61,541 bases of DNA from Octopus bimaculoides (taxonomy: Eukaryota): NCBI RefSeq assembly GCF_001194135.2, contig NC_068984.1:141014235-141075775 (forward strand), read 5' to 3'. Below the pieces are notes generated by a model, which worked only from the letters and a program-made list of their open reading frames with translations, did no database searches and was not told the DNA's origin. Positions 31,671 to 59,649 of the stretch are shown here, piece after piece. Within the stretch, counting starts at the first letter, position 1; every line of letters starts with the position of its first letter. The translations under genes and the position numbers were made by a program.

Positions 31671-32231
31671 ATTCGAAAACTTGATTGTCTTTTGATCACA
31701 CTACAACGGATAGTTTCAGCATAATCGGTTCTTCAAGTAATCATTTTAATCCACCTCAATTCATGGATTGCTGAGACAAGTGATTTTGAATGTGTGTACA
31801 CTTCTACACGTACACCCGCACAAACATACATACATGCACGCACGCACGCACACACGCGTATAGATAGAAAGAAGGATGAACAGATAGATAGAATTAGATT
31901 GAAACAACTAAATACACGTATAAGCTAATCTAGAAATATTCCTATATCGTCAAGTTTAGGATGAAACGCATGATTCAGCACTGGTGTAAGAAAAACATTG
32001 ATAAATATATTTTAAAATTACAAAACTAAATTTTAGCCGAGATGCAGACACGTTGTATTAAGCATTATATACGTGTTGCTATTTTAAGTATTTATTTTCT
32101 TTAATATTCTAGTATTGATCTGTCTATCATATGTATTCTCTTCTGTAAAACCTATTTCCATCTCAAGCACCATGGTTAAATTGTGGGTATGATATCCTTG
32201 CAGTTTATTATTTTTATTATATAACGTTGGT

Positions 32232-32430
32232 GTGGAGGCGCAATGGCCCAGTGGTTAGGGCAGCAGACTCGCGGTCGTAGGATCGCAGTTTCGATTCCAA
32301 GATCGGGCGTTGTGAGTATCTACTGAGCGAAAACACCTAAAGCTCCACGAGGCTCCAGCAGGGGGTGGTGGTGACCCCTGCTGTACCCATTCACTACAAC
32401 TTTCTCTCACTCTTTCTTCTTGTTTCTGTA
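32232..32430 (+). mobile_element. SINE family A, 5' half
   Basis: tggaggcgcaatggcccagtggttagggcagcagactcgcgg head; similarity ends about 32430. Confidence 0.85.
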
Positions 32431-35279: not shown

Positions 35280-35541
35280 GACAGCTGCCATACTTTTGAC
35301 AGCTGCCATACTTTTGACAGCTGCCATACTTTTGACAGCTGCCATACTTTTGACAGCTGCCATACTTTTGACAGCTGCCATACTTTTGACAGCTGCCATA
35401 CTTTTGACAGCTGCCATACTTTTGACAGCTGCCATACTTTTGACAGCTGCCATACTTTTGACAGCTGCCATACTCTTGACAGCTGCCATACTTTTGACAG
35501 CTGCCATACTTTTGACAGCTGCCATACTTTTGACAGCTGCC
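35280..35541. repeat. Minisatellite (GACAGCTGCCATACTTTT) x14.5
   Basis: 18-bp unit; 14 full copies plus 10 bp; a single variant base at 35475. Confidence 0.97.
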
Positions 35542-38500: not shown

Positions 38501-38615
38501 AATACTCAAAGGAGAGTTTTCAACAGATTCCAAAGTAGGACCCATATTCTCTCGTAGGTTCAATAACTTATCCATTTCGTTACTACAAATCATAAATTAC
38601 AATATATATATTTAT

Positions 38616-38941
38616 ATATATTGTATAAAAGATCGTGGATAAGGCCAAAACAATGTGAAGTAAATGCAAGGTAAATTACAAGAGAACAAATATATGAATT
38701 AATGTAGACTTACCTTGTATTCAATATTTCGGGGTTATGGTCCCATTTTCAAGAAATTGACGAATGTTGCCGATGTGCGCACATCGGCAACATTCGTCAA
38801 TTTCTTGAAAATGGGACCATAACCCCGAAATATTGAATACAAGGTAAGTCTACATTAATTCACATATTTGTTTTCTTGTGATTTACCTTGCATTTACTTC
38901 GCATTGTTTTGGCCTTACCCACGATATTTTATACAATATAT
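38616..38941. repeat. 326-bp palindrome (163-bp arms, no spacer)
   Basis: Centre between 38778 and 38779 (gatgtgc|gcacatc). Inner 84 bp perfectly complementary; 6 mismatches in the outer 79 bp. Confidence 0.95.
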
Positions 38942-38970
38942 TATACACAACGCTTCACAGTAATTATTCC

Positions 38971-40116: not shown

Positions 40117-40356
40117 TTTTTTGCCACAGGGGCAGCTTGCCACAAGGGCAGCTTGTTGAACTGGTACTTATTTTATCGACCTCCGAAAGGATGAAAGGCA
40201 AAGTCGACCTCGGCGGAATTCGAACTCAGACCGTAAAGACAGACGAAATACCGCTAAGCATTTCGCCCGGCATGCTAACGTTTCTACCAGTTCGCCGCCT
40301 TAATAATAATGATGATAATAACAACAACAATAATAATAATAATAATAATAATAGTG

Positions 40357-41796: not shown

Positions 41797-41951
41797 CTAA
41801 GATAAACGTTGGTATGTAAGAACCTGAACATCCAATCCCTGTTAGGAATCGCAAAAGATAAAACAAGTAAATGTTATTGACCCATGCGCTCCCTAAAGCA
41901 GCTGAACCTTGTAGCAAGATGGAATACATCATCACAGTTCTTCTTCCCACG
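41797..41951 (-). CDS. SLC22: SLC22 coding exon 4 (MFS motif A, TM3-TM4): VGRRTVMMYSILLQGSAALGSAWVNNIYLFYLLRFLTGIGCSGSYIPTFIL-G
   Basis: Acceptor after a long pyrimidine tract (ccaatctag), donor G|gtaagt. 155 nt, phase 2 to 1. SD-x-x-GRR and RFLTG motifs. Confidence 0.94.
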
Positions 41952-42339
41952 CTAGATTGGTTGCAAAGGAAATATAAGAAGGAAAGAAAAAAAAAGACAA
42001 AAAGAAAAATACATCTTTAGTACGACATATGTATATGAATTTGCATGTGATTATTACAGTTGCAGCTGTCGCTTATAATGTTTCACCACCACCACCACCA
42101 CCACCACCACCNNNNNNNNNNNNNNNNNNNNNNNNNNNNNNNNNNNNNNNNNNNNNNNNNNNNNNNNNNNNNNNNNNNNNNNNNNNNNNNNNNNNNNNNN
42201 NNNNNNNNNNNNNNNNNNNNNNNNNNNNNNNNNNNNNNNNNNNNNNNNNNNNNNNNNNNNNNNNNNNNNNNNNNNNNNNNNNNNNNNNNNNNNNNNNNNN
42301 NNNNNNNNNNNNNNNNNNNNNNNNNNNNNNNTTTTACTA

Positions 42340-42805: not shown

Positions 42806-42880
42806 AAAAAGTCGATGGCAAAAACATCCATGTATGTATGGATATTAATATATATGTATGCGTGTATGCATGTATACGTG

Positions 42881-43114
42881 TTATTTCTTTACTACCCACA
42901 AGGGGCTACGCACAGAGGTGACAAACAAAGACAGACAAACGGATTAAGTCGATTATATCGACCCCAGTGCGTAACTGGTACTTATTTAATCGACCCCGAA
43001 AGGATGAAAGGCAAAGTCGACCTCGGCGGAATTTGAACTCAGAACGTAGCGGCAGACGAAATACCGCTAAGCATTTCGCCCGGCGTGCTAACGTTTCTGC
43101 CAGCTCGCCGCCTT
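42881..43114 (-). mobile_element. SINE family B, full length, near consensus (young)
   Basis: ttatttctttactacccacaagggg...gccagctcgccgcctt; short TSD atgcatgtata. Confidence 0.9.
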
Positions 43115-43360
43115 AATGCATGTATATGTGTATGTATGTATGCATGCATATATATATGTATGTGTGTATGTACGTATATACATACGCAAGTATATGCATA
43201 TATATATGTGTGTGTGTATAAATATGTTTGTACGTGTGTATTAATACATGTGTATGTATGCCTGCATGTGTGTGTGCTGGAATCTATACGTGCATATATC
43301 ATATAAATGTTTGGGTGAGGTAGTGTTGAATGCATATTAAAAAGTTGTAAGTCTACTTAC

Positions 43361-43464
43361 ACATCCGATACGTTTCCCAGTGTCACTACGCCAAGTAGCA
43401 CACCAAAGAAAAAAACCACGATACAGTTCGCTGACATGAGACTTCGATCGCAAACAAGATCCAA
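43361..43464 (-). CDS. SLC22: SLC22 coding exon 3 (TM2): LDLVCDRSLMSANCIVVFFFGVLLGVVTLGNVSD-V
   Basis: Acceptor cttctgaaccag, donor GT|gtaagt. 104 nt, phase 0 to 2. DLVC and G.L.G....G.VSD motifs. Confidence 0.93.
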
Positions 43465-43911
43465 CTGGTTCAGAAGACAGAGAATATATACATATATTGG
43501 TGAGTGAGTGGGATAGAGAGAGAAATAGTGATGCAGATATACACGCTAGGGCTTGATATATAACATATACAGAGAGAGAGAGTGAGAGAGAAAAATTCAT
43601 GCTTACGAACACCGGTGTATAAGCATACAGCTATTTATTAATTTACAGAGAAAATTTACAAGCAGTACAAAATATACAGAAAAATGAGGGGAGAAGCATG
43701 GTAAATCCAACAGCTGTTTCTGGGGGCTCGGAATTACGTAATAGTTCTAATGCTTATAACTGGAAAATGGAATGTGAAAAAATTCAAAGATATGCGACCA
43801 GTAAAGAAGGCATATAACTATTACCATAAGACCGGCCTCCCTCTTCAGGGAGGAAAGGTTGGCAAATAGTATTTACGCACAGGCATGCATATATATATAT
43901 GTGTGTGTGTA

Positions 43912-43953
<42 letters not shown>

Positions 43954-45022
43954 CATACGTACATGCGTGCGTACGTACGGACTTACGTATGTATGCCATT
44001 ATTCAGTTTATTTCAAGATTTCTTGCCGAGAGAGAAAGAGCCGGTTTCTAACCTAGATCCAAGGCTCCTTCATTGGAATTTCAACAAATTCAACAGGATA
44101 TTTTTGCATGTATATATACGTACAGTATTTGGAGTGAGTGCATGTGCATATTTGGATGTTTTGTTTTATGTATATTTTCTCATGCATGTAGCTGCATCAT
44201 ATCTATTATGTATATATGTATGCAACAAATTGACTCGGCATCAATTTCGAGAAATTCGACTTCCCAAACCAGAAAGGAGAAAGCAAATCAGAAGATGACA
44301 GATTCAAGCCTTCAATGCAACTGTAGTCGCAATATATAAATATCTTTATGCTTGCACATATGTGCTTATCTAAATATATTTAGTTATCTATGTTTATACA
44401 TATCTCCCTATATATATATCATCTATGTGTATCTTTATGTGTATATGTATGTATGTAAATATGTATATTTATATGCACCAATCTTAATTCTGTTTGTCTG
44501 CATCACTCCCTATATATGTATGTATGTAATTTTGTATACGTGTGTGTATGTGTATGTATGTTTACATATATCTATATGTGTATGCATGTGTAAACATGTA
44601 TGCAAGTATGTACTCATGTATGAATACCCGTATTTGTGTATATGCACATGCTTCGATGCATATGAATGCGTAGGTCGAAGTTGAAGTTCTCTGCTAGACT
44701 GTTTATGTCGGTGTTCTATATATATATGTGTGCATATGATATGGTTCTATGTCATGCCTTAGTTACAACAATTCTAATGATTAGACCATTCTATGAGCGC
44801 GTCTGTAAGTGTTCTTGTGGAGGAGGTATGTAAGTGTATTAAATAAGGATTAATATTGTGAAAAAGAAACTTCACTGATGGGGAAGGTCTGTGTTTGAAA
44901 GTGGAGTCAACTTTCAGCGGAAATCTAAATTTTCCCTGACAATTTAAGCAGCCAGTTGATCTGGTTGAAGCTACAGTAGTCAAAACGAATTTTCTGATTT
45001 AGCTATCTATGCTCTCGCTCAC

Positions 45023-45054
<32 letters not shown>

Positions 45055-45118
45055 GACACACACACACACACACACACACACATACTCACAAACACACACA
45101 TATGTATATATATATATA

Positions 45119-45150
<32 letters not shown>

Positions 45151-45305
45151 CCTATATCTATGAATATATATATATATTGTTGGTTTCTATGTTCAGTTAT
45201 AATAAGAATGAATTTTACATTAATGTGAAAGGTTACGACGTAGAGTACAAGTTTATTATTCTTCAAAAAAAGTAGTACTGACAGTGACTTCAAAATTTTG
45301 GCCAG

Positions 45306-45347
<42 letters not shown>

Positions 45348-45484
45348 CAAAATGAGATCACAAAATCAAGGCTGTGAGGAGTTTTTCGGGCATTTATAAG
45401 GAAAAAGATATATAGTCCATTATTTACATTATATTTGTCCTCATCTTGTTTGTTGTCAAATGTAAAATAACGTAAATAATGTGC

Positions 45485-45557
45485 ATAATTCCTCATCTCT
45501 TAAATTCCTCATAATTCCTCATCTCTTAAATTCCTCATAATTCCTCATCTCTTAAAT
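45485..45557. repeat. 26-bp tandem repeat x2.8 (ataattcctcatctcttaaattcctc)
   Basis: Read directly from the sequence. Confidence 0.9.
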
Positions 45558-45860
45558 ATAGAACTGTATAGATATAGGCTGTCAATGTATAGATTAACAC
45601 AATGTTACCAATAGTTTCATGCCTTAGGTCAATAATCCTAGCAGCTTTTGAATGAAATTAGACCAGTAATCTATTACTGAGGTATTTGTTCTTTGTTAAA
45701 TTACGTGCATTTATTAATGCGTTTGTAAGTACATGCCAACCGTTTTGTAATTACGCGTAACATTTGTTAAATTATGTAAGGTCTTTAGAATTTTGATTAT
45801 TTATATTGCAGCTTAGACGTAAAATGGTAGTAATACTAGCGAAGTTTAAAAACCATAGGA

Positions 45861-45910
45861 GAGGTTTAGTTGGGTTTAGTTGGGTTTAGTTGGGTTTAGT
45901 TGGGTTTAGT
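45861..45910 (+). repeat. 10-bp tandem repeat (TGGGTTTAGT) x4-5; canonical G-quadruplex motif
   Basis: GGG tracts at 45872, 45882, 45892 and 45902 with 7-nt loops. Confidence 0.85.
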
Positions 45911-46025
45911 GAGGTATTAATGACTTCATGGTTATTGTTTACGATGCTGCCGTAAGAGAAATAAGTGAGAGTTTAAAGGGTTAATTTCGAAGGAATCGGG
46001 AATAATTTTACAAAAAATAACTCAC

Positions 46026-46245
46026 ATCTTCTATAACTGATGTTCTGAAGACGGAATGGTCGTACACCCAAGAATTACACTGCATCTTCGTGCCATTTTC
46101 ACCGAGACTTGAGTTATACATGTGGCATTTGTCGTAAACGTACTGGTCATCTTTGAACTCATAGGGTATCGTTTTGTTGACTAAAGTATCATGGTAACTG
46201 CCTTGGCTTTTGTACGTATCATTCGGAAGATCCGGTAAAGCGCAC
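46026..46245 (-). CDS. SLC22: SLC22 coding exon 2 (large extracellular loop): R-CALPDLPNDTYKSQGSYHDTLVNKTIPYEFKDDQYVYDKCHMYNSSLGENGTKMQCNSWVYDHSVFRTSVIED
   Basis: Not in the ORF track; found by manual translation. Acceptor ttgttatag, donor GAT|gtgagt. 220 nt, phase 2 to 0, matching both neighbours. Has the conserved loop Cys, the C..WVYD.S.F motif and four N-x-S/T sequons. Confidence 0.93.
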
Positions 46246-46488
46246 CTATAACAAATTCATTAATATTTCTTTTAAGTGATATAATTAAAGATGGTTGCAA
46301 AGAAAAGAAAGAGGAAATGTAAAACAAAAAAGCAAAATATAAACATAATTGAAAATATAAAGGAAGAATTTTCTCAGTTGGATCGGAATAAAGTTAGTCA
46401 TCAAAATTTCATTGCTTGCCAAAACACGGTTACAAAATGCCTCAAACTTCCATATATTCGATTAATGTAGGTAGATATATAATAACAT

Positions 46489-46855
46489 GCCGGGCGAAAT
46501 GCTTAGCGGTATTTCGTCTGCCGTTACGTTCTGAGTTCAAATTCCGCCGAGGTCGACTTTGCCTTTCATCCTTTCGGGGTCGATAAATTAAGTACCAGTT
46601 ACGCACTGGGGTCGATGTAATCGACTTAATCCGTTCGTCTGTTCTTGTTTGTCCCCTCTATGTTTAGCCCCTTGTGGGCAATAACGAAATAGGTATTTCA
46701 TCCGTCTTTACGTTTTGAATTCTGTCGGGGTTGACTTTGTCTTTCATCCTTTCGAAGGTCGATAAAATAAGTACTAATTGAACACTGAGATCGATGTGAT
46801 CGACTTAGCCTCTCCCTAAAACTTATTGATCTTTGTGCCAAAATTTGAAACTAGT
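46489..46855 (+). mobile_element. SINE family B near-consensus copy (46489-46693) followed by an older second copy (46696-46855)
   Basis: gccgggcgaaatgcttagcggtatttcgtctgccg...ccccttgtgggcaataacgaaatagg; about 93% identical to the reverse complement of 42882-43084 by manual comparison. Confidence 0.9.
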
Positions 46856-47855
46856 GTAAACAGTGGTCTATTCAAATGTCACACATGTGAATGAGAACCT
46901 TCTTGACAACTGGAATCACTGTAATTAAGCAAATTTTGATATATTTATAAATATGTTCCACTGCTTTTTTCTTCTTCAATCATTTGAATAACTAACAATG
47001 GATAACTCAAAGTAACGATTCAAGAAACTTCACTTTCTAATAAAATATACAAATTCTACTTTTTATGGATTGAGTGGTTTTTACTTCGTTTGTTGCTACA
47101 AACGCTCGACTGGAAATCAAATAGTGACCCTTAAGTCCTGCAAAGAATATCTTGATATCGCCCAGAAATAAACCTGATTGGAAAAAAGATATCCATGAAA
47201 TAATCAGGAGAATAAGGCAGAAGTTATATTTCTTTGATAAAGGCAGTATGAATAGTACTATGTAAAAAAGGTTTGAGTTAAGAAGTTGTAATTCCTCCTC
47301 CAGAGAAACTCTGAGTCTGATTTTTCAGTACAATAAAAGGGTGACATTTAAAAAAAATTTAACAAAATTCCAAAAGCTTCACACACATGAATTTTCTTCA
47401 AAGAACACCAAAAATGTTTTACGAAATTGATATCCGCACATGTCATAGACATCGTTTCAGCAATATAACCAACACCTATAAGGAACGAAACTCTAGTTCT
47501 TACCATACTGTTAATTCAGGAACAAAAGAAATAGCCAGCAGCATAAAAGTAAACGATAGAACATAATCTATAGCTTTGCGTGAGTGATAACTTAGTTCTA
47601 AAAATCATAAAGATAATGTTCTTGCTAACCCCAAATGTAGATTAAAAAGTCCAGGGGAAAAAAAGGAGATATATAGACGCAGTGAAAATATTTTAAACTC
47701 CAGGTTGTTTAACTTTAAGTAGTTCACTTCACTTCCGTTATGAAATTATAGTTTATCACTTATACCTATATACATATAGACACACCTATATTGCGCTCAT
47801 GTCGCGTATATGCAAATACTCAGATACTAATACATGCACTCGTGTTTGCGTGCGT

Positions 47856-47953
<98 letters not shown>

Positions 47954-49023: not shown

Positions 49024-49112
49024 NNNNNNNNNNNNNNNNNNNNNNNNNNNNNNNNNNNNNNNNNNNNNNNNNNNNNNNNNNNNNNNNNNNNNNNNNNNNN
49101 NNNNNNNNNNNN

Positions 49113-49150
<38 letters not shown>

Positions 49151-49151
<1 letters not shown>

Positions 49152-49401
49152 TAGGTTAGTGCATAATTATTTCGGCTTTTTTTCAACAAATTTTATTCAG
49201 CAACAACAATAACATGTAGTAAAAAACATCTTTAAACGATTATTCCGGAGTATATTCACCATCTACTTCAATTACTGCTTCCCATTTGCTTGGCAAACGG
49301 TCAGACCGTCATTTAAAGATGTTTTTGTTAAATATTGTTATTATTTTCGTTGAATAAAATTTGTTGAAAAAGAAAGCCGCAATAATTATGCACCAACCCA
49401 A
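49151..49401. mobile_element. Mariner-derived MITE (TTAGGTTGGTGCATAATTATTGCGG-type TIR), copy 1
   Basis: About 55-bp TIRs; the minus strand carries a transposase C-terminus DRLPSKWEAVIEVDGEYTPE*. Confidence 0.88.
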
Positions 49402-52685: not shown

Positions 52686-53003
52686 TGTTGTTGTTGGCAC
52701 TCCGTCGCTTACGACATCGAGGGTTCCAGTTGATCCGATCAACGGAACAGCCTGCTCGTGAAATTAACGTGCAAATGACTGAGCACTCCACAGATACGTG
52801 TACCCTTAACGTAGTTCTCGGGGATATTCAGCGTGACACAGTGTGACAAGGCTGACCCTTTGAATTACAGGCACAACAGAAACAGGAAGTAAGAGTGAGA
52901 GAAAGTTGTGGTGAAAGAGTACAGCACGGTTCGCCACCATCCCCTGCCGGAGCCTTGTGGAACTTTAGGTGTTTTCGCTCAATAAACACTCACAACTGGG
53001 AAT
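52686..53003 (-). mobile_element. SINE family A copy, truncated by N-gap
   Basis: Near-identical to 1853-2220 (gttggcactccgtcgcttacgac...aaacactcacaac). Confidence 0.87.
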
Positions 53004-53496
53004 NNNNNNNNNNNNNNNNNNNNNNNNNNNNNNNNNNNNNNNNNNNNNNNNNNNNNNNNNNNNNNNNNNNNNNNNNNNNNNNNNNNNNNNNNNNNNNNNN
53101 NNNNNNNNNNNNNNNNNNNNNNNNNNNNNNNNNNNNNNNNNNNNNNNNNNNNNNNNNNNNNNNNNNNNNNNNNNNNNNNNNNNNNNNNNNNNNNNNNNNN
53201 NNNNNNNNNNNNNNNNNNNNNNNNNNNNNNNNNNNNNNNNNNNNNNNNNNNNNNNNNNNNNNNNNNNNNNNNNNNNNNNNNNNNNNNNNNNNNNNNNNNN
53301 NNNNNNNNNNNNNNNNNNNNNNNNNNNNNNNNNNNNNNNNNNNNNNNNNNNNNNNNNNNNNNNNNNNNNNNNNNNNNNNNNNNNNNNNNNNNNNNNNNNN
53401 NNNNNNNNNNNNNNNNNNNNNNNNNNNNNNNNNNNNNNNNNNNNNNNNNNNNNNNNNNNNNNNNNNNNNNNNNNNNNNNNNNNNATATTGACAAAC

Positions 53497-53639
53497 CTGT
53501 GATTTTTTGTTGGTAAGATAAATACACTGATTCCATAATGGTAGCCATCCATACTGGCACCTAGATAAATCCATAAGATCATAATTCTTTGGAACTTTCC
53601 CAAGGAACCGATATGGTTCAACAGAACATCAAACTTCAT
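53497..53639 (-). CDS. SLC22: SLC22-family transporter, coding exon 1 (N-terminus, TM1): MKFDVLLNHIGSLGKFQRIMILWIYLGASMDGYHYGISVFILPTKNH-R
   Basis: Typical SLC22 N-terminus (MKFD..L..IG..GKFQ, P..HRC). 143 nt = 47 codons + 2. Donor AG|gtttgt at 53495-53496. In-frame TAA just upstream of the ATG. An upstream acceptor (ttttgcag, 53671-53672) adds 31 nt of 5'UTR. Confidence 0.93.
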
Positions 53640-53751
53640 TTTTGAGATAGTAAGTTTCGGAATTTATAATCTGCAAAAATATAAAGAGAAAAAAAACTGT
53701 TAAAATATGGTCTTATAGATCGAAAATGAAAAGACATTTAGATTATAGCAA

Positions 53752-53956
53752 ATTTGGTTTTAAATGTTTGACACAAAATCAGAAATGTTGAGGGGAGGGG
53801 CTCAGTCGATTACATCGGCTCCACAGTTCAACTGGTACTCATTTTATCGACCTCGAAATAATGAAAGGTAAATTTGAATTGACCGCGTAAAGTCGGATGA
53901 AATGCCGCTAAGCATTTGGTCCGGCGCGCTAACGATTCTACCAGCTCACTGCCTTA
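53752..53956 (-). mobile_element. SINE family B copy
   Basis: gtcgattacatcggc...ggtactc..ttttatcgacctcgaaa...ccagctcactgcctt. Confidence 0.8.
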
Positions 53957-54182
53957 AAATGTAGAAATGATGAAGAACAACATATGTATGTGTGTGTATG
54001 TATGTATGCATGTATGTGTGTATGTATGTATGTATGTATGTATGTATGCATGTATGTATTTTCCCTAAAACTATATATTTTATATATACTTTATCTATAA
54101 GGCTCAATTTAATTTTATGTTTTTATAAATTGATTTTAATTGAGTTTTTACCTGTAATTTTGGATTCTGTCCCTAATATTAT

Positions 54183-54639: not shown

Positions 54640-55512
54640 CGAGGTTGTAACAAGAAGTTCCCGATTCGTTATGTTTAACAGAAATAACTTTATTTACCTA
54701 AGTTTTAACGCCATCTCCTTCGAAATAGTCACCTTGCGCAGCAATACACCGGTCCCAACATTCCTGACACTTTTGGAATCCGGCATGGAAGTCGTTTTCC
54801 GTAAGTGAGTCGAGGACCTCTTTCGATTCGCTCTGGATCTCAACCACGGTGTTAAAATGGGCAACTTTTGAGCTGCATTTTCATCTTGGAGAAGATATAA
54901 AAGTCCGCAGGGGCTAAGTCTGGCGAATAGGGCGAGTGGGGCCGCGACATCATGTTGTTGTTTTTGGCGAGAAACTCACGATTGAAGAGAATTCAATGAC
55001 AAGGGTGAAGTATTTAATTCTTCGCGCTCCACAGATCCGGTTGCTTTCGCCGAATGTCTTCCTTCAAACGCTCTAAAACGTCATTGTCTTCCGATGATCT
55101 GATGAATTTTTTCCCACATTTCGGGGTGACGCTCGTGGCACGTCTTCCAGATCGCTCGTCGTCTTCCACGGACGTTCTTCCGCTTTTGAAGCTCCCGTGC
55201 CTCTCGAAACATTGCGTACGACCCATTGCCACATCGCTGTAAGATTGCCGATGAATTCTCAATGTCTCCCTAACAGAATTCTCAAGTTTAACGCAAAACT
55301 TCACGTTGGTTCTTCGTTCCAACTTCGTGTCCATGGCAAAAATCGCAGACTACAGCATACACGTGATCACAAAAATACAAATCTCTCAACAGCGATGTCA
55401 CTGAAGGTCACCTCATGAAGGTCATTGCTAGCTCTCACTGCGCACGAAACTGTGCGCTGCCATCTATCGGGGTGCTACAGAACTAGTCAGAGAACTTTTT
55501 GATACCACTTCG
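54640..55512 (-). mobile_element. Internally deleted mariner transposon (873 bp)
   Basis: About 27-bp imperfect TIRs (cgaggttgtaacaagaagttc / gaactttttgataccacttcg), TA at 54638-54639. Transposase N-terminal HTH (55014-55334) followed by HSPYSPDLAPAD and CIAAQGDYFEG; the central DDD region is deleted. Confidence 0.92.
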
Positions 55513-55703: not shown

Positions 55704-56117
55704 CAAGCGATGGTGGGGGACAAACATAGCAAAGTACACTTGTCCAAGGTGTCACACAATGGGACAGAACTTGAAACCATGCGGTTAGAAAGCAAATTTT
55801 GTACCCCACGGACTCTGATATTAATTTTTCTCTCCTTTGTAGAGAATCCAGAAATTATTATGTAATCTTCGGATTTTCTTACCATGATTGACAAAGAATT
55901 CACTGCCAGGACGAAAAGCATTACAGATTAGCTACCATTCTGGAATATTTCTGATGAATATGCTTGTATCTATGTCTTGTGAGAATGTTGTGACAAGCTG
56001 TAACTTGCTACTATTGTCATGAATATTTCCTCAAAACAGCTTCAAGTCTTTAAGAACAAAAGGTGTGGGTGGCATTATATATGTATGGCATTGCATGTAT
56101 GTATGACATTATATGTA

Positions 56118-56372
56118 TTGGGTTGGTGCATAATTATTGCGGCTTTTTTTCAACAAATTTTATTCAACAAAAACAATAACATGTGACAAAAACATCTTTA
56201 AATGATTATTCCGGAGCATATTCACCATCTACTTTAATTACTGCTTATCATTTGCTTGGCAGATGGTCAGACTGTCATTTAAACATGCTTTTGTTAAATA
56301 TTGTTTTTGTTGAATAAAATTTGTTGAAAAAAAAAAAAAAAAAAAAGCCGCAATAATTATGCACCAACCCAA
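56118..56372. mobile_element. Mariner-derived MITE, copy 2
   Basis: Same element as 49151-49401; TA on both sides (56116-56117, 56373-56374). Confidence 0.9.
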
Positions 56373-58667: not shown

Positions 58668-58923
58668 TTTTCTACTCTAGGCACAAGGCCCGAAATTTTA
58701 GGGGAGGGAGCCCGGTGAAATACCAGCAATTTTAGAAGAAGGGGATCAGTTGATTACATTGTTCTCAGTACTGGACTGGAACATATTTTTACGACCCTGA
58801 AAGGATAGAAGGATAAATCGACCTAAGAGTATAATAGTAATATAGACCCTTACATTATCGAATACATGACACTATAAGGCCAGCGACTTACATTCTAGCT
58901 AGTTGCAAACAATTATAAATATC

Positions 58924-59290
58924 GTGGGGCTCCATCGGTTACGACGATGAGGGTCCCAGTTGATCCGATCAATAGAACAGCCTGCTCGTGAAATTAACGT
59001 GCAAGTGGCTGAGCACTCCACAGACACGTGTACCCTTAACGTAGTTCTCGGGGAGATTCAGCGTGACACACAGTGTGACAAGGCTGGCCCTTTGAAATAC
59101 AGGTACAACAAGAAAGAGTGAAAGGTGTGGTGAAAGAATACAGCAGGGTTCGCCACCATCCCCTGTCAGAGTCTCGTGGAGCTTTAGGTGTTTTCGCTCA
59201 ATAAACACTCACAACGCCCGGTCTGAGAATTGAAACCGCAATCCTACGACCGCGAGTCCGCTGCCCTAACCACTGGGCCGTTGCGCCTCC
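58924..59290 (-). mobile_element. SINE family A, full length
   Basis: Ends ccactgggccgttgcgcctcc. 15-bp TSD acaat(t/c)ataaatatc at 58909-58923 and 59291-59305. Confidence 0.88.
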
Positions 59291-59649
59291 ACAATCATAA
59301 ATATCCACGCAATCCACACAAACACATACCCCACATAATCAAGCATAGCCCGAAACTAAGATAAATAACATCAAACAAACATCGTCTACGAAACGCAAAT
59401 AGCACCCAAACGAAACAACGCAGCTCGCGTGTTCTGCGCAGACGACGAATCACTAAAATAACACCAGAAACAACAAATCAATGCGATGCAAAACTGTTGT
59501 AGCATAGAAAGAGAATTTTGCATTTGCCAAATAGACAATACAGCGCCTAACTCAGGAATTGCGTGTGGGGGTGTCTACGCATTGTGGAGCAGTTGAATAG
59601 ATGGTGTTGGTGATGATGATGATGATAATGATGATGATGATGATGATGA

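What the first reader, a model, noticed from the sequence alone, without database searches (positions are those of the whole stretch)
42881..46693. Young inverted SINE pair symmetrically brackets SLC22 exons 2+3: candidate 324-nt circRNA with a stop-free circular frame, or in-frame loss of the extracellular loop
Seen: the two best-preserved family B SINEs of the same tail subtype (42881-43114 minus; 46489-46693 plus) are inverted, with about 14 mismatches over ~203 nt. They sit 246 nt past the exon 3 donor and 243 nt before the exon 2 acceptor. Exons 2+3 total 220+104 = 324 nt and are phase 2 at both ends. Back-splicing gives GAT GT|G TGC (Val), so the circle has no in-frame stop and carries three Met codons. 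Skipping both exons joins CAC AG|C GTG in frame, deleting the glycosylated loop and TM2. Established: inverted intronic SINEs promote back-splicing and are ADAR substrates; stop-less circles with length divisible by 3 can support rolling-circle translation; coleoids edit RNA heavily. Inference: this locus may produce a circRNA or a skipped isoform controlled by SINE pairing and editing.
Basis: partly seen in the sequence, partly recalled or inferred. Interest (0 to 1): 0.75.

Follow-up and report, generated by a model that had tools for sequence, protein, structure and literature searches.

The report
Inverted SINE pair flanking SLC22 exons
Two copies of a common octopus mobile element lie in opposite orientation in the introns on either side of exons 2-3 of an SLC22 transporter gene; this could favour a circular RNA, but such arrangements are common in a SINE-rich genome and nothing here shows that a circle is made.

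Summary
The window is Octopus bimaculoides chromosome CM046604.1. The minus-strand gene is NCBI's 'SLC22 member 27 isoform X1' (XP_052823506.1), and its protein confirms exons 1-4 and their phases.

- **SINE pair:** 42882-43090 (-) and 46483-46691 (+) are 193/209 complementary (92%). They lie 246 nt and 237 nt from the exon 3 donor and the exon 2 acceptor.
- **Pairing strength:** it is the strongest and nearest inverted pair in the assembled gene. It stays paired (194 bp) in the minimum-energy fold of the 4.2-kb pre-mRNA segment.
- **Reading frame:** exons 2+3 total 324 nt. The circular coding frame has no stop and three AUGs, and skipping both exons stays in frame.

The interpretation remains a prediction.

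- A stop-free circle follows automatically for coding exons whose length divides by 3, about 1 in 3 by chance.
- SINEs are dense: about 13 copies of this family in 61 kb. With insertion sites fixed and orientations random, an exon-bracketing inverted pair arises 88% of the time.
- Published octopus data report only 296 confident circRNAs across 18 tissues, attributed to ADAR.
- No skipped isoform is on record.

Most likely this is an ordinary intronic dsRNA-forming repeat pair and a probable ADAR hyper-editing substrate. Interest is low.

The parts
42875..43120 (-). SINE copy A. It is full length, with the AAGGCGG head and the long tail subtype. It is sense in the pre-mRNA, lies in intron 3, and is 246 nt downstream of the exon 3 donor. 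The paired arm is 42882-43090.
46483..46693 (+). SINE copy B. It is 5'-truncated and has the same tail subtype as A. It is antisense in the pre-mRNA, lies in intron 1, and is 237 nt upstream of the exon 2 acceptor. The paired arm is 46483-46691.
46700..46860 (+). Older, diverged, 5'-truncated copy of the same SINE family directly adjoining B in the same orientation. It is a weak second partner for A (90 nt, 81%).
46026..46245 (-). SLC22 exon 2 (220 nt, phase 2 at its 5' end). It encodes most of the large extracellular loop, with 4 N-x-S/T sequons. Its acceptor has a poor pyrimidine tract (43% Y).
43465..46025 (-). Intron 2 (2561 nt), rich in microsatellites. It includes a (UG)n run in the pre-mRNA at 45023-45100.
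43361..43464 (-). SLC22 exon 3 (104 nt). It encodes the DLDLVCD motif and TM2 and has a strong GTAAGT donor.
53497..53639 (-). First coding exon (ATG at 53639; 143 nt of CDS; encodes TM1). Its donor, CACAG|GTTTGT, is followed 12 nt later by a 481-N assembly gap.
41797..41951 (-). Exon 4 (155 nt; encodes GRR...TM3-TM4). The annotated X1 protein reads through its donor into the intron and stops after 52 extra residues.
40159..40304 (-). Next sense-orientation SINE copy downstream. It is the best competitor for B (119 nt, 94%; duplex -217.7 kcal/mol) but lies 6.2 kb away.
47807..47950 (.). (CA)n in the pre-mRNA, in intron 1. It is complementary to the (UG)n at 45023-45174 in intron 2 (78 nt at 94%; duplex -163.7 kcal/mol). 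This alternative pairing would bracket exon 2 alone.
42112..42331 (.). Assembly gap (220 N) in intron 3. There are further gaps in intron 1 at 49024-49112 and 53004-53484. Hidden repeats cannot be excluded; the edges of the first two gaps are microsatellites.

Best explanation
This is an ordinary product of SINE accumulation. Two independent insertions of one unclassified octopus SINE subfamily landed in opposite orientations in introns 1 and 3 of an SLC22-type transporter gene.

When the gene is transcribed, the antisense copy B is made first and the sense copy A about 3.4 kb later. The two can zip into a duplex of about 209 bp and 92% complementarity, looping out exon 2, intron 2 and exon 3.

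The most likely consequence in an octopus cell is promiscuous A-to-I hyper-editing of both arms by ADAR, which then weakens the duplex. Normal linear splicing remains the dominant outcome. Back-splicing of exon 3 to exon 2, or skipping of both exons, would be at most a minor by-product without a selected function.

Shown: the repeat, its strength, its position relative to verified splice sites, the frame arithmetic, and the lack of a stronger competitor in the assembly. Inferred: duplex formation in vivo, editing, and the low yield of circles.
For: **The pair and its pairing**
- Repeat geometry and identity are established.
- The insertions were independent: the 5' truncation points and flanks differ, and B is nested next to an older copy.
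- Duplex energy is -371.7 kcal/mol against -93.5 for shuffles. It is stronger than every alternative partner (-217.7, -200.8, -134.9).
- 194 A:B base pairs persist in the MFE of the 4.2-kb pre-mRNA segment.

**How common the arrangement is**
- The window holds about 13 copies of the family and 44 inverted repeat pairs at E<=1e-8. A second, equally strong pair lies 3.4 kb apart at 1924-2174/5579-5824.
- An orientation-randomised model gives an exon-spanning inverted pair in 88% of trials.
- SINEs make up 11.6% of the O. vulgaris genome.

**Literature**
- O. bimaculoides has the highest hyper-editing signal of 19 species. It is concentrated in long, near-perfect dsRNA formed by neighbouring inverted repeats, which ADAR then unwinds (PMC5625713).
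- CircRNAs are few and low in octopus: 296 across 18 tissues, 200 of them in a single tissue. This is attributed to ADAR antagonism (PMC9699675).

**Isoform record**
- Only the unskipped protein is on record, and the skip products are not in a 15-billion-sequence collection.
Against: - The geometry is close to what works best in mammalian minigenes. The arms are long and highly complementary, each under 250-300 nt from the back-splice sites. No intra-intronic competitor is present, and the upstream intron is long (7.25 kb).
- Exon 2 has a weak acceptor (43% pyrimidines against 70% for exons 3 and 4). This could slow linear splicing of intron 1 and give pairing time to act.
- SLC22 transporters are typically expressed in excretory and digestive tissues, where ADAR activity may be lower than in the nervous system (general knowledge, not tested).
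- No RNA data of any kind were available, so absence of a circle is not shown.
- The protein search tool was patchy. It returned no octopus paralogues at all, so 'nothing on record' is weak evidence.
Confidence: 0.65

Rival explanations
1. SINE-driven circRNA. A:B pairing brings the exon 3 donor next to the exon 2 acceptor, and the spliceosome back-splices them. After removal of intron 2 this gives a 324-nt two-exon circle, detectable in at least one tissue. ADAR editing of the arms tunes the yield.
For: - The splice sites are canonical.
- It is the strongest and nearest inverted pair in the gene, with arms 237-270 nt from the sites.
- No competing within-intron pairing involves either arm.
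- Exon 2 has a weak acceptor.
- Octopus does make some circRNAs by back-splicing at annotated sites.
- The mechanism is established for Alu pairs in mammals (general knowledge; Ivanov et al. 2015, as cited).
Against: - There are no junction reads or any other expression data.
- Only 296 confident circRNAs were found in 18 octopus tissues, despite SINEs being over 10% of the genome. The predictive value of an inverted pair is therefore low.
- A 209-bp near-perfect duplex is an ideal hyper-editing target.
- B can be removed with intron 1 before A is transcribed (inference from transcription order).
- The annotated transcript is a truncated, intron-retaining form, and the middle exons of the gene are missing from the assembly. 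The level and integrity of expression are therefore uncertain.
Confidence: 0.15
2. In-frame exon 2+3 skipping. Looping-out by the SINE duplex, together with the weak exon 2 acceptor, promotes direct exon 1-exon 4 splicing. The resulting protein lacks the extracellular loop and TM2.
For: - The exon 1-exon 4 join is in frame.
- The exon 2 acceptor has a poor pyrimidine tract while exon 4's is good.
- Looping-out of exons by flanking complementary repeats is a known route to skipping (general knowledge).
Against: - The exact predicted product, with the X1 C-terminus, is not in the protein collection. No second protein sharing exons 1 and 4 was retrieved.
- Removing one TM helix from a 12-TM MFS fold would invert the topology of everything downstream. 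The product would almost certainly be non-functional (inference from the SLC22 alignment).
- There are no RNA data.
Confidence: 0.1
3. Rolling-circle translation. The 324-nt circle is translated without termination from one of its three AUGs. The product is a concatemer of the extracellular loop plus TM2.
For: - The circle length is divisible by 3, with 0 in-frame stops and 3 Met codons.
- Rolling-circle ORFs are translatable in human cells, and ADAR editing can boost this for MAPT circles (PMC9242994; PMC9825173).
Against: - It requires the circle to exist first.
- The property is generic: 14% of human circRNAs have host-frame rolling-circle ORFs, and about 1 in 3 of in-frame exon sets would by arithmetic.
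- There is no evidence of an IRES-like element, ribosome association or peptides.
- Only Met54 has a purine at -3, read from the sequence.
Confidence: 0.02

Closest known systems
Inverted-repeat Alu (IRAlu)-flanked exonic circRNA loci of primates (complementary-sequence-mediated exon circularisation; Jeck 2013, Zhang 2014, Ivanov 2015; from general knowledge, with Ivanov 2015 cited)
   Same: - Two SINE copies in opposite orientation lie in the introns flanking internal exons, within a few hundred nt of a canonical acceptor and donor.
- Cross-intron pairing is stronger than any within-intron pairing.
- The upstream intron is long.
   Different: - The SINE is an unrelated, unclassified octopus family.
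- No back-splice junction has been observed for this locus.
- The host organism is reported to have few, low-level circRNAs.
Human MAPT 12->7 and 12->10 circRNAs (PMC9825173)
   Same: - The circle is made only of coding exons.
- Its length is divisible by 3 and it has no stop codon, so it is potentially translated as a rolling circle.
- A-to-I editing is proposed as a modulator.
   Different: The MAPT circles are experimentally shown, as are their translation and editing. Here everything after the DNA arithmetic is hypothetical.
Hyper-edited dsRNA formed by neighbouring inverted repeats in metazoan pre-mRNAs, strongest in O. bimaculoides (PMC5625713)
   Same: It is a long, near-perfect intramolecular duplex (209 bp, 92%) between two nearby inverted copies of one repeat in a single transcription unit.
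   Different: Editing at this particular pair was not measured.
SLC22 organic ion transporters (OCTN2, URAT1, OAT1 structures)
   Same: - The N-terminal 207 aa align collinearly with residues 1-217 of human SLC22 proteins (E 4e-17 to 1e-13).
- There are Pfam Sugar_tr and MFS_1 hits.
- A large Cys- and sequon-rich loop lies between TM1 and TM2.
   Different: - The annotated product is a 259-aa truncation.
- The exons for roughly TM5-TM6 were not found.
- C-terminal exons lie 27 kb or more downstream (14165-10040) and are not joined to it in the annotation.

Membership tests
Inverted-repeat-flanked exonic circRNA locus | Observed back-splice junction (downstream donor joined to upstream acceptor), resistant to RNase R | not testable with these tools
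   No RNA-seq access. The protein databases hold no product carrying the junction peptide, which is only very weak negative evidence.
Inverted-repeat-flanked exonic circRNA locus | Canonical AG acceptor and GT donor at the two back-splice sites | tested here: met
   The sites are TTATAG|GTGCGC at 46245 and GGATGT|GTAAGT at 43361. The exon borders are confirmed by XP_052823506.1.
Inverted-repeat-flanked exonic circRNA locus | Reverse-complementary match between the upstream and downstream flanking introns | tested here: met
   209 nt at 92%, with duplex energy -371.7 kcal/mol. It is retained in the MFE of 4.2 kb of pre-mRNA.
Inverted-repeat-flanked exonic circRNA locus | Cross-intron pairing not outcompeted by within-intron or nearer pairings | tested here: met
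   It is the best inverted pair in 30000-54200 apart from an unrelated palindrome. The competitors for B are shorter and 6-13 kb away. Caveat: there are three assembly gaps in the flanking introns.
Rolling-circle-translated circRNA (infinite ORF) | Circle length divisible by 3, with no in-frame stop and at least one AUG in that frame | tested here: met
   The circle is 324 nt. Stops per frame are 0, 14 and 8. Met residues are at 42, 54 and 83.
Rolling-circle-translated circRNA (infinite ORF) | Evidence of cap-independent initiation and concatemeric product | not testable with these tools
   This needs ribosome profiling, mass spectrometry or reporter constructs.
tRNA-derived SINE | 5' part recognisably derived from a tRNA (Pol III A and B boxes) | tested here: inconclusive
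   ARAGORN found no tRNA. Rfam gave no tRNA match even at E<=10. A B-box-like GAGTTCAAATTCC is visible in the consensus, but that is a resemblance only.
SINE (generic) | Short, non-coding, many dispersed copies with a common 5' head, 5' truncations, and a range of divergence | tested here: met
   There are about 13 copies in 61.5 kb on both strands. Eight copies reach the common 5' head (a 5-nt GGCGG core, or a one-mismatch variant of it) and three are truncated. JC distance to the consensus ranges from 0.05 to 0.22.
CORE-SINE superfamily (octopus OR1/OR2, MIR) | Shares the ~60-nt CORE central domain | tested here: not met
   Local alignment to a MIR consensus that I recalled from memory scored 19, against 17.1 +/- 2.3 for shuffles; 103 of 500 shuffles scored as well. 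The test is rough because the reference sequence was not taken from a database.
SLC22 / MFS transporter | Sugar_tr or MFS_1 profile match, and SLC22-type large loop between TM1 and TM2 | tested here: met
   - Pfam Sugar_tr scores 37.6 bits (cut-off 22.3) and MFS_1 38.4 bits (cut-off 33.4).
- PDB SLC22 hits have E-values down to 3.6e-17 and are collinear.
- The exon 2-3 peptide has five N-x-S/T sequons and five Cys; four of the sequons lie in the extracellular loop and the fifth (NVS at residue 104) follows TM2.

The most novel reading that the evidence does not exclude
The SINE pair drives tissue-specific back-splicing of SLC22 exons 2-3 into a 324-nt stop-less circle. ADAR editing of the arms sets the circle's abundance, and the circle is translated as a rolling circle into a loop-TM2 concatemer. 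This would be the first SINE-dependent, editing-gated, translated circRNA described in a cephalopod.
Probability: 0.02. Interest if true: 0.55.

Novelty: new member of a known kind. Interest (0 to 1): 0.2.

Why it matters
If the circle existed and depended on the SINE arms, it would be a convenient single-locus test. It could show whether the very high ADAR activity of coleoids suppresses repeat-driven back-splicing, as Zolotarov et al. proposed from bulk counts. It would also extend the Alu-type mechanism to an unrelated invertebrate SINE.

As it stands, the locus is one of what are probably thousands of similar intronic inverted SINE pairs in a genome that is about 8-12% SINE. Its 'infinite ORF' is a by-product of exon phase arithmetic. 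Its practical value is as a well-characterised candidate for anyone already screening octopus total-RNA data.

Tried and rejected
**Sister-species test of SINE presence**
- This was not possible. Two protein searches returned no Octopus orthologue whose locus could be fetched: one hit for the N-terminal half and no cephalopod-annotated hit for the C-terminal half.
- The Logan contigs reached through P0017 and P0002 are only 72-75% identical paralogue or distant sequences, or do not match at all.
- The searchable DNA collections hold no cephalopod genomes.
- Dating is uninformative. JC distance of about 0.06-0.09 to the family consensus corresponds to roughly the 18-My SINE wave. That overlaps the 13-33 My O. 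bimaculoides/O. vulgaris split.

**Looking for annotated skip isoforms**
- Exact look-ups of three hypothetical products found none.

**Classifying the SINE**
- ARAGORN, Rfam at the gathering threshold and Rfam at E<=10 gave nothing relevant; there were only spurious miRNA-like hits in the flanking CATA microsatellite.
- CORE-SINE similarity was not supported.

**Completing the gene model**
- tblastn with 18 SLC22 homologues and a six-frame ORF scan recovered exons at 14165-13935, 12868-12629 and 10291-10040.
- Neither recovered the exons for Sugar_tr profile positions ~120-189. These are probably lost in the many assembly gaps or too short to detect.

**Segmental inverted duplication as the origin of the pair**
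- Rejected. Homology stops at the SINE borders and the copies have different 5' ends.

**The 246/243-nt 'symmetry'**
- I give it no weight. No mechanism requires it, and with BLAST-defined ends the values are 246 (or 270 to the paired arm) and 237.


Full report
**Locus and gene**

The window is identical, gaps included, to Octopus bimaculoides chromosome CM046604.1 (GCA_001194135.2) at about 141.04-141.08 Mb.

On the minus strand lies the gene that NCBI calls 'solute carrier family 22 member 27 isoform X1' (XP_052823506.1 = UniProt A0A0L8FN27, 259 aa). My hand-built exons all have GT-AG borders. Their conceptual translation is 100% identical to that protein over 207 residues.

| Exon | Coordinates | Length (nt) |
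|---|---|---|
| 1 (CDS) | 53639-53497 | 143 |
| 2 | 46245-46026 | 220 |
| 3 | 43464-43361 | 104 |
| 4 | 41951-41797 | 155 |

The annotated protein then reads through the exon 4 donor into the intron. The N-terminus matches Pfam Sugar_tr and MFS_1. It aligns collinearly with residues 1-217 of human OCTN2, URAT1 and OAT1 structures. Together they carry five N-x-S/T sequons, four of them in the loop, and five Cys.

Further SLC22 exons (ESPRWL motif, TM7-TM11) lie at 14165-13935, 12868-12629 and 10291-10040. The exons for roughly TM5-TM6 were not found, and eight of the window's twelve assembly gaps lie between exon 4 and the 14165-13935 exon. The gene is thus long (over 43 kb) and imperfectly assembled and annotated.

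**The repeat pair**

The repeat finder and BLAST agree on arms 42882-43090 and 46483-46691. They are 209 nt, 193/209 complementary, ungapped and 3392 nt apart.

The element belongs to a roughly 190-nt family with about 13 copies in the window on both strands. Most copies share an AAGGCGG head and several are 5'-truncated. Divergence from the family consensus spans JC 0.05-0.22, which is typical SINE behaviour. Only these two copies share an additional ~70-nt tail, so 'same tail subtype' is right.

Copy A is full length. Copy B starts at about position 31 and directly adjoins an older copy in the same orientation (46700-46860). The two arose by independent insertions, not by an inverted duplication.

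No tRNA or other Rfam similarity could be shown. A rough test against a MIR/CORE consensus was negative. The family remains an 'unclassified SINE', like most octopus SINE families in the recent O. vulgaris annotation.

**Position and pairing**

In the pre-mRNA, B (antisense) lies in intron 1, 237 nt upstream of the exon 2 acceptor. A (sense) lies in intron 3, with its head 246 nt and its paired arm 270 nt downstream of the exon 3 donor.

Predicted duplex energies are as follows:

| Pairing | Energy (kcal/mol) |
|---|---|
| A with B | -371.7 |
| Shuffled A with B | -93.5 +/- 7.2 |
| B with the 40159 copy | -217.7 |
| B with the 33914 copy | -200.8 |
| A with the old copy next to B | -134.9 |

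In a full minimum-energy fold of the 4.2-kb pre-mRNA segment, 194 A:B pairs form and only 4 bases of each arm pair elsewhere.

A self-comparison of 30000-54200 shows no within-intron inverted repeat involving either arm. No stronger pair exists in the gene apart from an unrelated palindrome at 38613-38945.

A (CA)n/(UG)n pairing between intron 1 (47807-47950) and intron 2 (45023-45174) could bracket exon 2 alone. It is weaker (-163.7 kcal/mol), and another (UG)n run lies in intron 1 itself.

The caveat is that intron 1 holds two assembly gaps and intron 3 holds one. Two of the three are bordered by microsatellites rather than SINEs.

**Frame arithmetic**

Exons 2+3 total 324 nt. The host reading frame of the circle has no stop, while the other frames have 14 and 8, and it has three Met codons. 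The back-splice codon is GTG. Joining exon 1 to exon 4 gives AGC and stays in frame.

These statements are correct but carry little information. Any set of internal coding exons whose summed length is divisible by 3 has a stop-free circular host frame unless the junction codon happens to be a stop. That is roughly one case in three. In human data, 14% of full-length circRNAs already have host-frame rolling-circle ORFs (PMC9242994).

**How surprising is the arrangement?**

- A pair of this geometry placed at random in the 43.6-kb gene brackets at least one whole exon in 22% of placements. It does so with length divisible by 3 in 8%.
- Keeping the real insertion sites of this one family and randomising orientations gives an inverted pair no more than 5 kb apart in different introns in 88% of trials.
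- The window as a whole has 44 inverted repeat pairs at E<=1e-8. A second pair of similar quality lies only 3.4 kb apart at 1924-2174/5579-5824.
- SINEs make up 11.6% of the O. vulgaris genome (PMC13282606). By inference, many similar brackets must exist genome-wide.
- The one uncommon feature is that both arms lie within 300 nt of the splice sites (0.2% of random placements). That is a post-hoc criterion.

**What it most likely does**

The literature gives two relevant facts.

First, O. bimaculoides shows the strongest hyper-editing signal of 19 species examined. The signal is concentrated in long, near-perfect dsRNA formed by neighbouring inverted repeats within one transcript, which ADAR then unwinds (PMC5625713).

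Second, a survey of 18 O. vulgaris tissues with total RNA-seq found only 296 high-confidence circRNAs, 200 of them in a single tissue, at overall low levels. The authors attribute this to ADAR melting intronic duplexes (PMC9699675).

Together with the transcription order, this makes ADAR hyper-editing of an otherwise inconsequential intronic duplex the best-supported outcome (confidence about 0.65). B and the exon 2 acceptor are made about 3.4 kb before A, so intron 1 can be removed first; this step is inference.

A detectable exon 3-to-exon 2 circle is possible (about 0.15). It is favoured by the ideal geometry and by the weak exon 2 acceptor, which is 43% pyrimidine against 70% for exons 3 and 4.

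In-frame skipping is possible (about 0.1). It would delete one TM helix from an MFS fold and so probably yield a dead protein. No such product is on record.

Rolling-circle translation needs the circle plus internal initiation and is very unlikely (about 0.02).

**Comparison with known systems**

Mechanistically the proposal is the IRAlu model of exon circularisation transplanted to an octopus SINE. The translational idea mirrors the stop-less MAPT circles, whose translation is enhanced by ADAR editing (PMC9825173).

The sequence-level defining features of an inverted-repeat-flanked circRNA locus were tested and met: splice sites, cross-intron complementarity and lack of a competitor. The defining feature that matters, a back-splice junction, could not be tested.

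The locus is at most a new candidate member of a known kind, and nothing in it departs from that kind.

**Limits**

- No RNA data were accessible.
- The protein word-index search was visibly patchy: it returned no octopus paralogues. Negative database results are therefore weak.
- Sister-species comparison was impossible.
- Dating puts the insertions near the species split and so decides nothing. JC to the consensus is about 0.06-0.09, against 0.065 for about 18 My and a split at 13-33 My.

Noticed in passing
window 38613-38945: A near-perfect 334-nt palindrome (95.8% self-complementary). As RNA it folds into a hairpin of about 165 bp, at -257.6 kcal/mol and z = -36. It lies inside the annotated range of the same gene (53639-37270). 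It looks like a foldback or MITE-like element and would be a stronger ADAR or Dicer substrate than the SINE pair.
   Followed up: partly
window 35280-35541: An 18-nt minisatellite (GACAGCTGCCATACTTTT, 14.6 copies, 99% identical) that is open in all three minus-strand frames. NCBI's next gene model (378 aa, no Pfam hit) starts at window 35525, inside the array, so that model looks doubtful.
   Followed up: partly
window 14165-13935, 12868-12629, 10291-10040 (minus strand): Intact SLC22 exons (ESPRWL motif, TM7-TM11) lie 27 kb or more downstream of exon 4. They are not joined to the annotated 259-aa product, and no identical protein was retrieved. The exons for about TM5-TM6 are missing from the assembly. 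The gene is probably split or truncated by annotation and assembly gaps.
   Followed up: partly
window 1924-2221, 5546-5917, 32231-32430, 52695-52996, 58917-59292: A second interspersed repeat family of about 300 nt at 85-93% identity. It includes an inverted pair only 3.4 kb apart (1924-2174/5579-5824) that is as strong as the SINE pair under study. The copy at 52695-52996 is cut off by the 53004-53484 assembly gap.
   Followed up: no
window 53671-53700 and 53795-53965: A good 3' splice site (a long T-rich tract followed by CAG) sits about 30 nt upstream of the ATG, so the first coding exon is probably preceded by an unannotated 5'-UTR exon. A diverged sense-orientation SINE copy at 53795-53965 would then also be intronic. 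It would be a weak partner for B (71 nt, 83%).
   Followed up: no
window 54855-54938 (minus strand): A 28-aa tblastn match (50% identity, E 1e-4) to an SLC22-like protein of Pinctada, upstream of exon 1. It may be a relic of a neighbouring paralogue's exon, or chance.
   Followed up: no
window 49143-49401 and 56110-56335: Another repeat, with a direct copy 6.7 kb away (233 nt, 89%) and an internal inverted segment (49154-49239/49309-49398, 84%). It forms a local hairpin inside intron 1.
   Followed up: no
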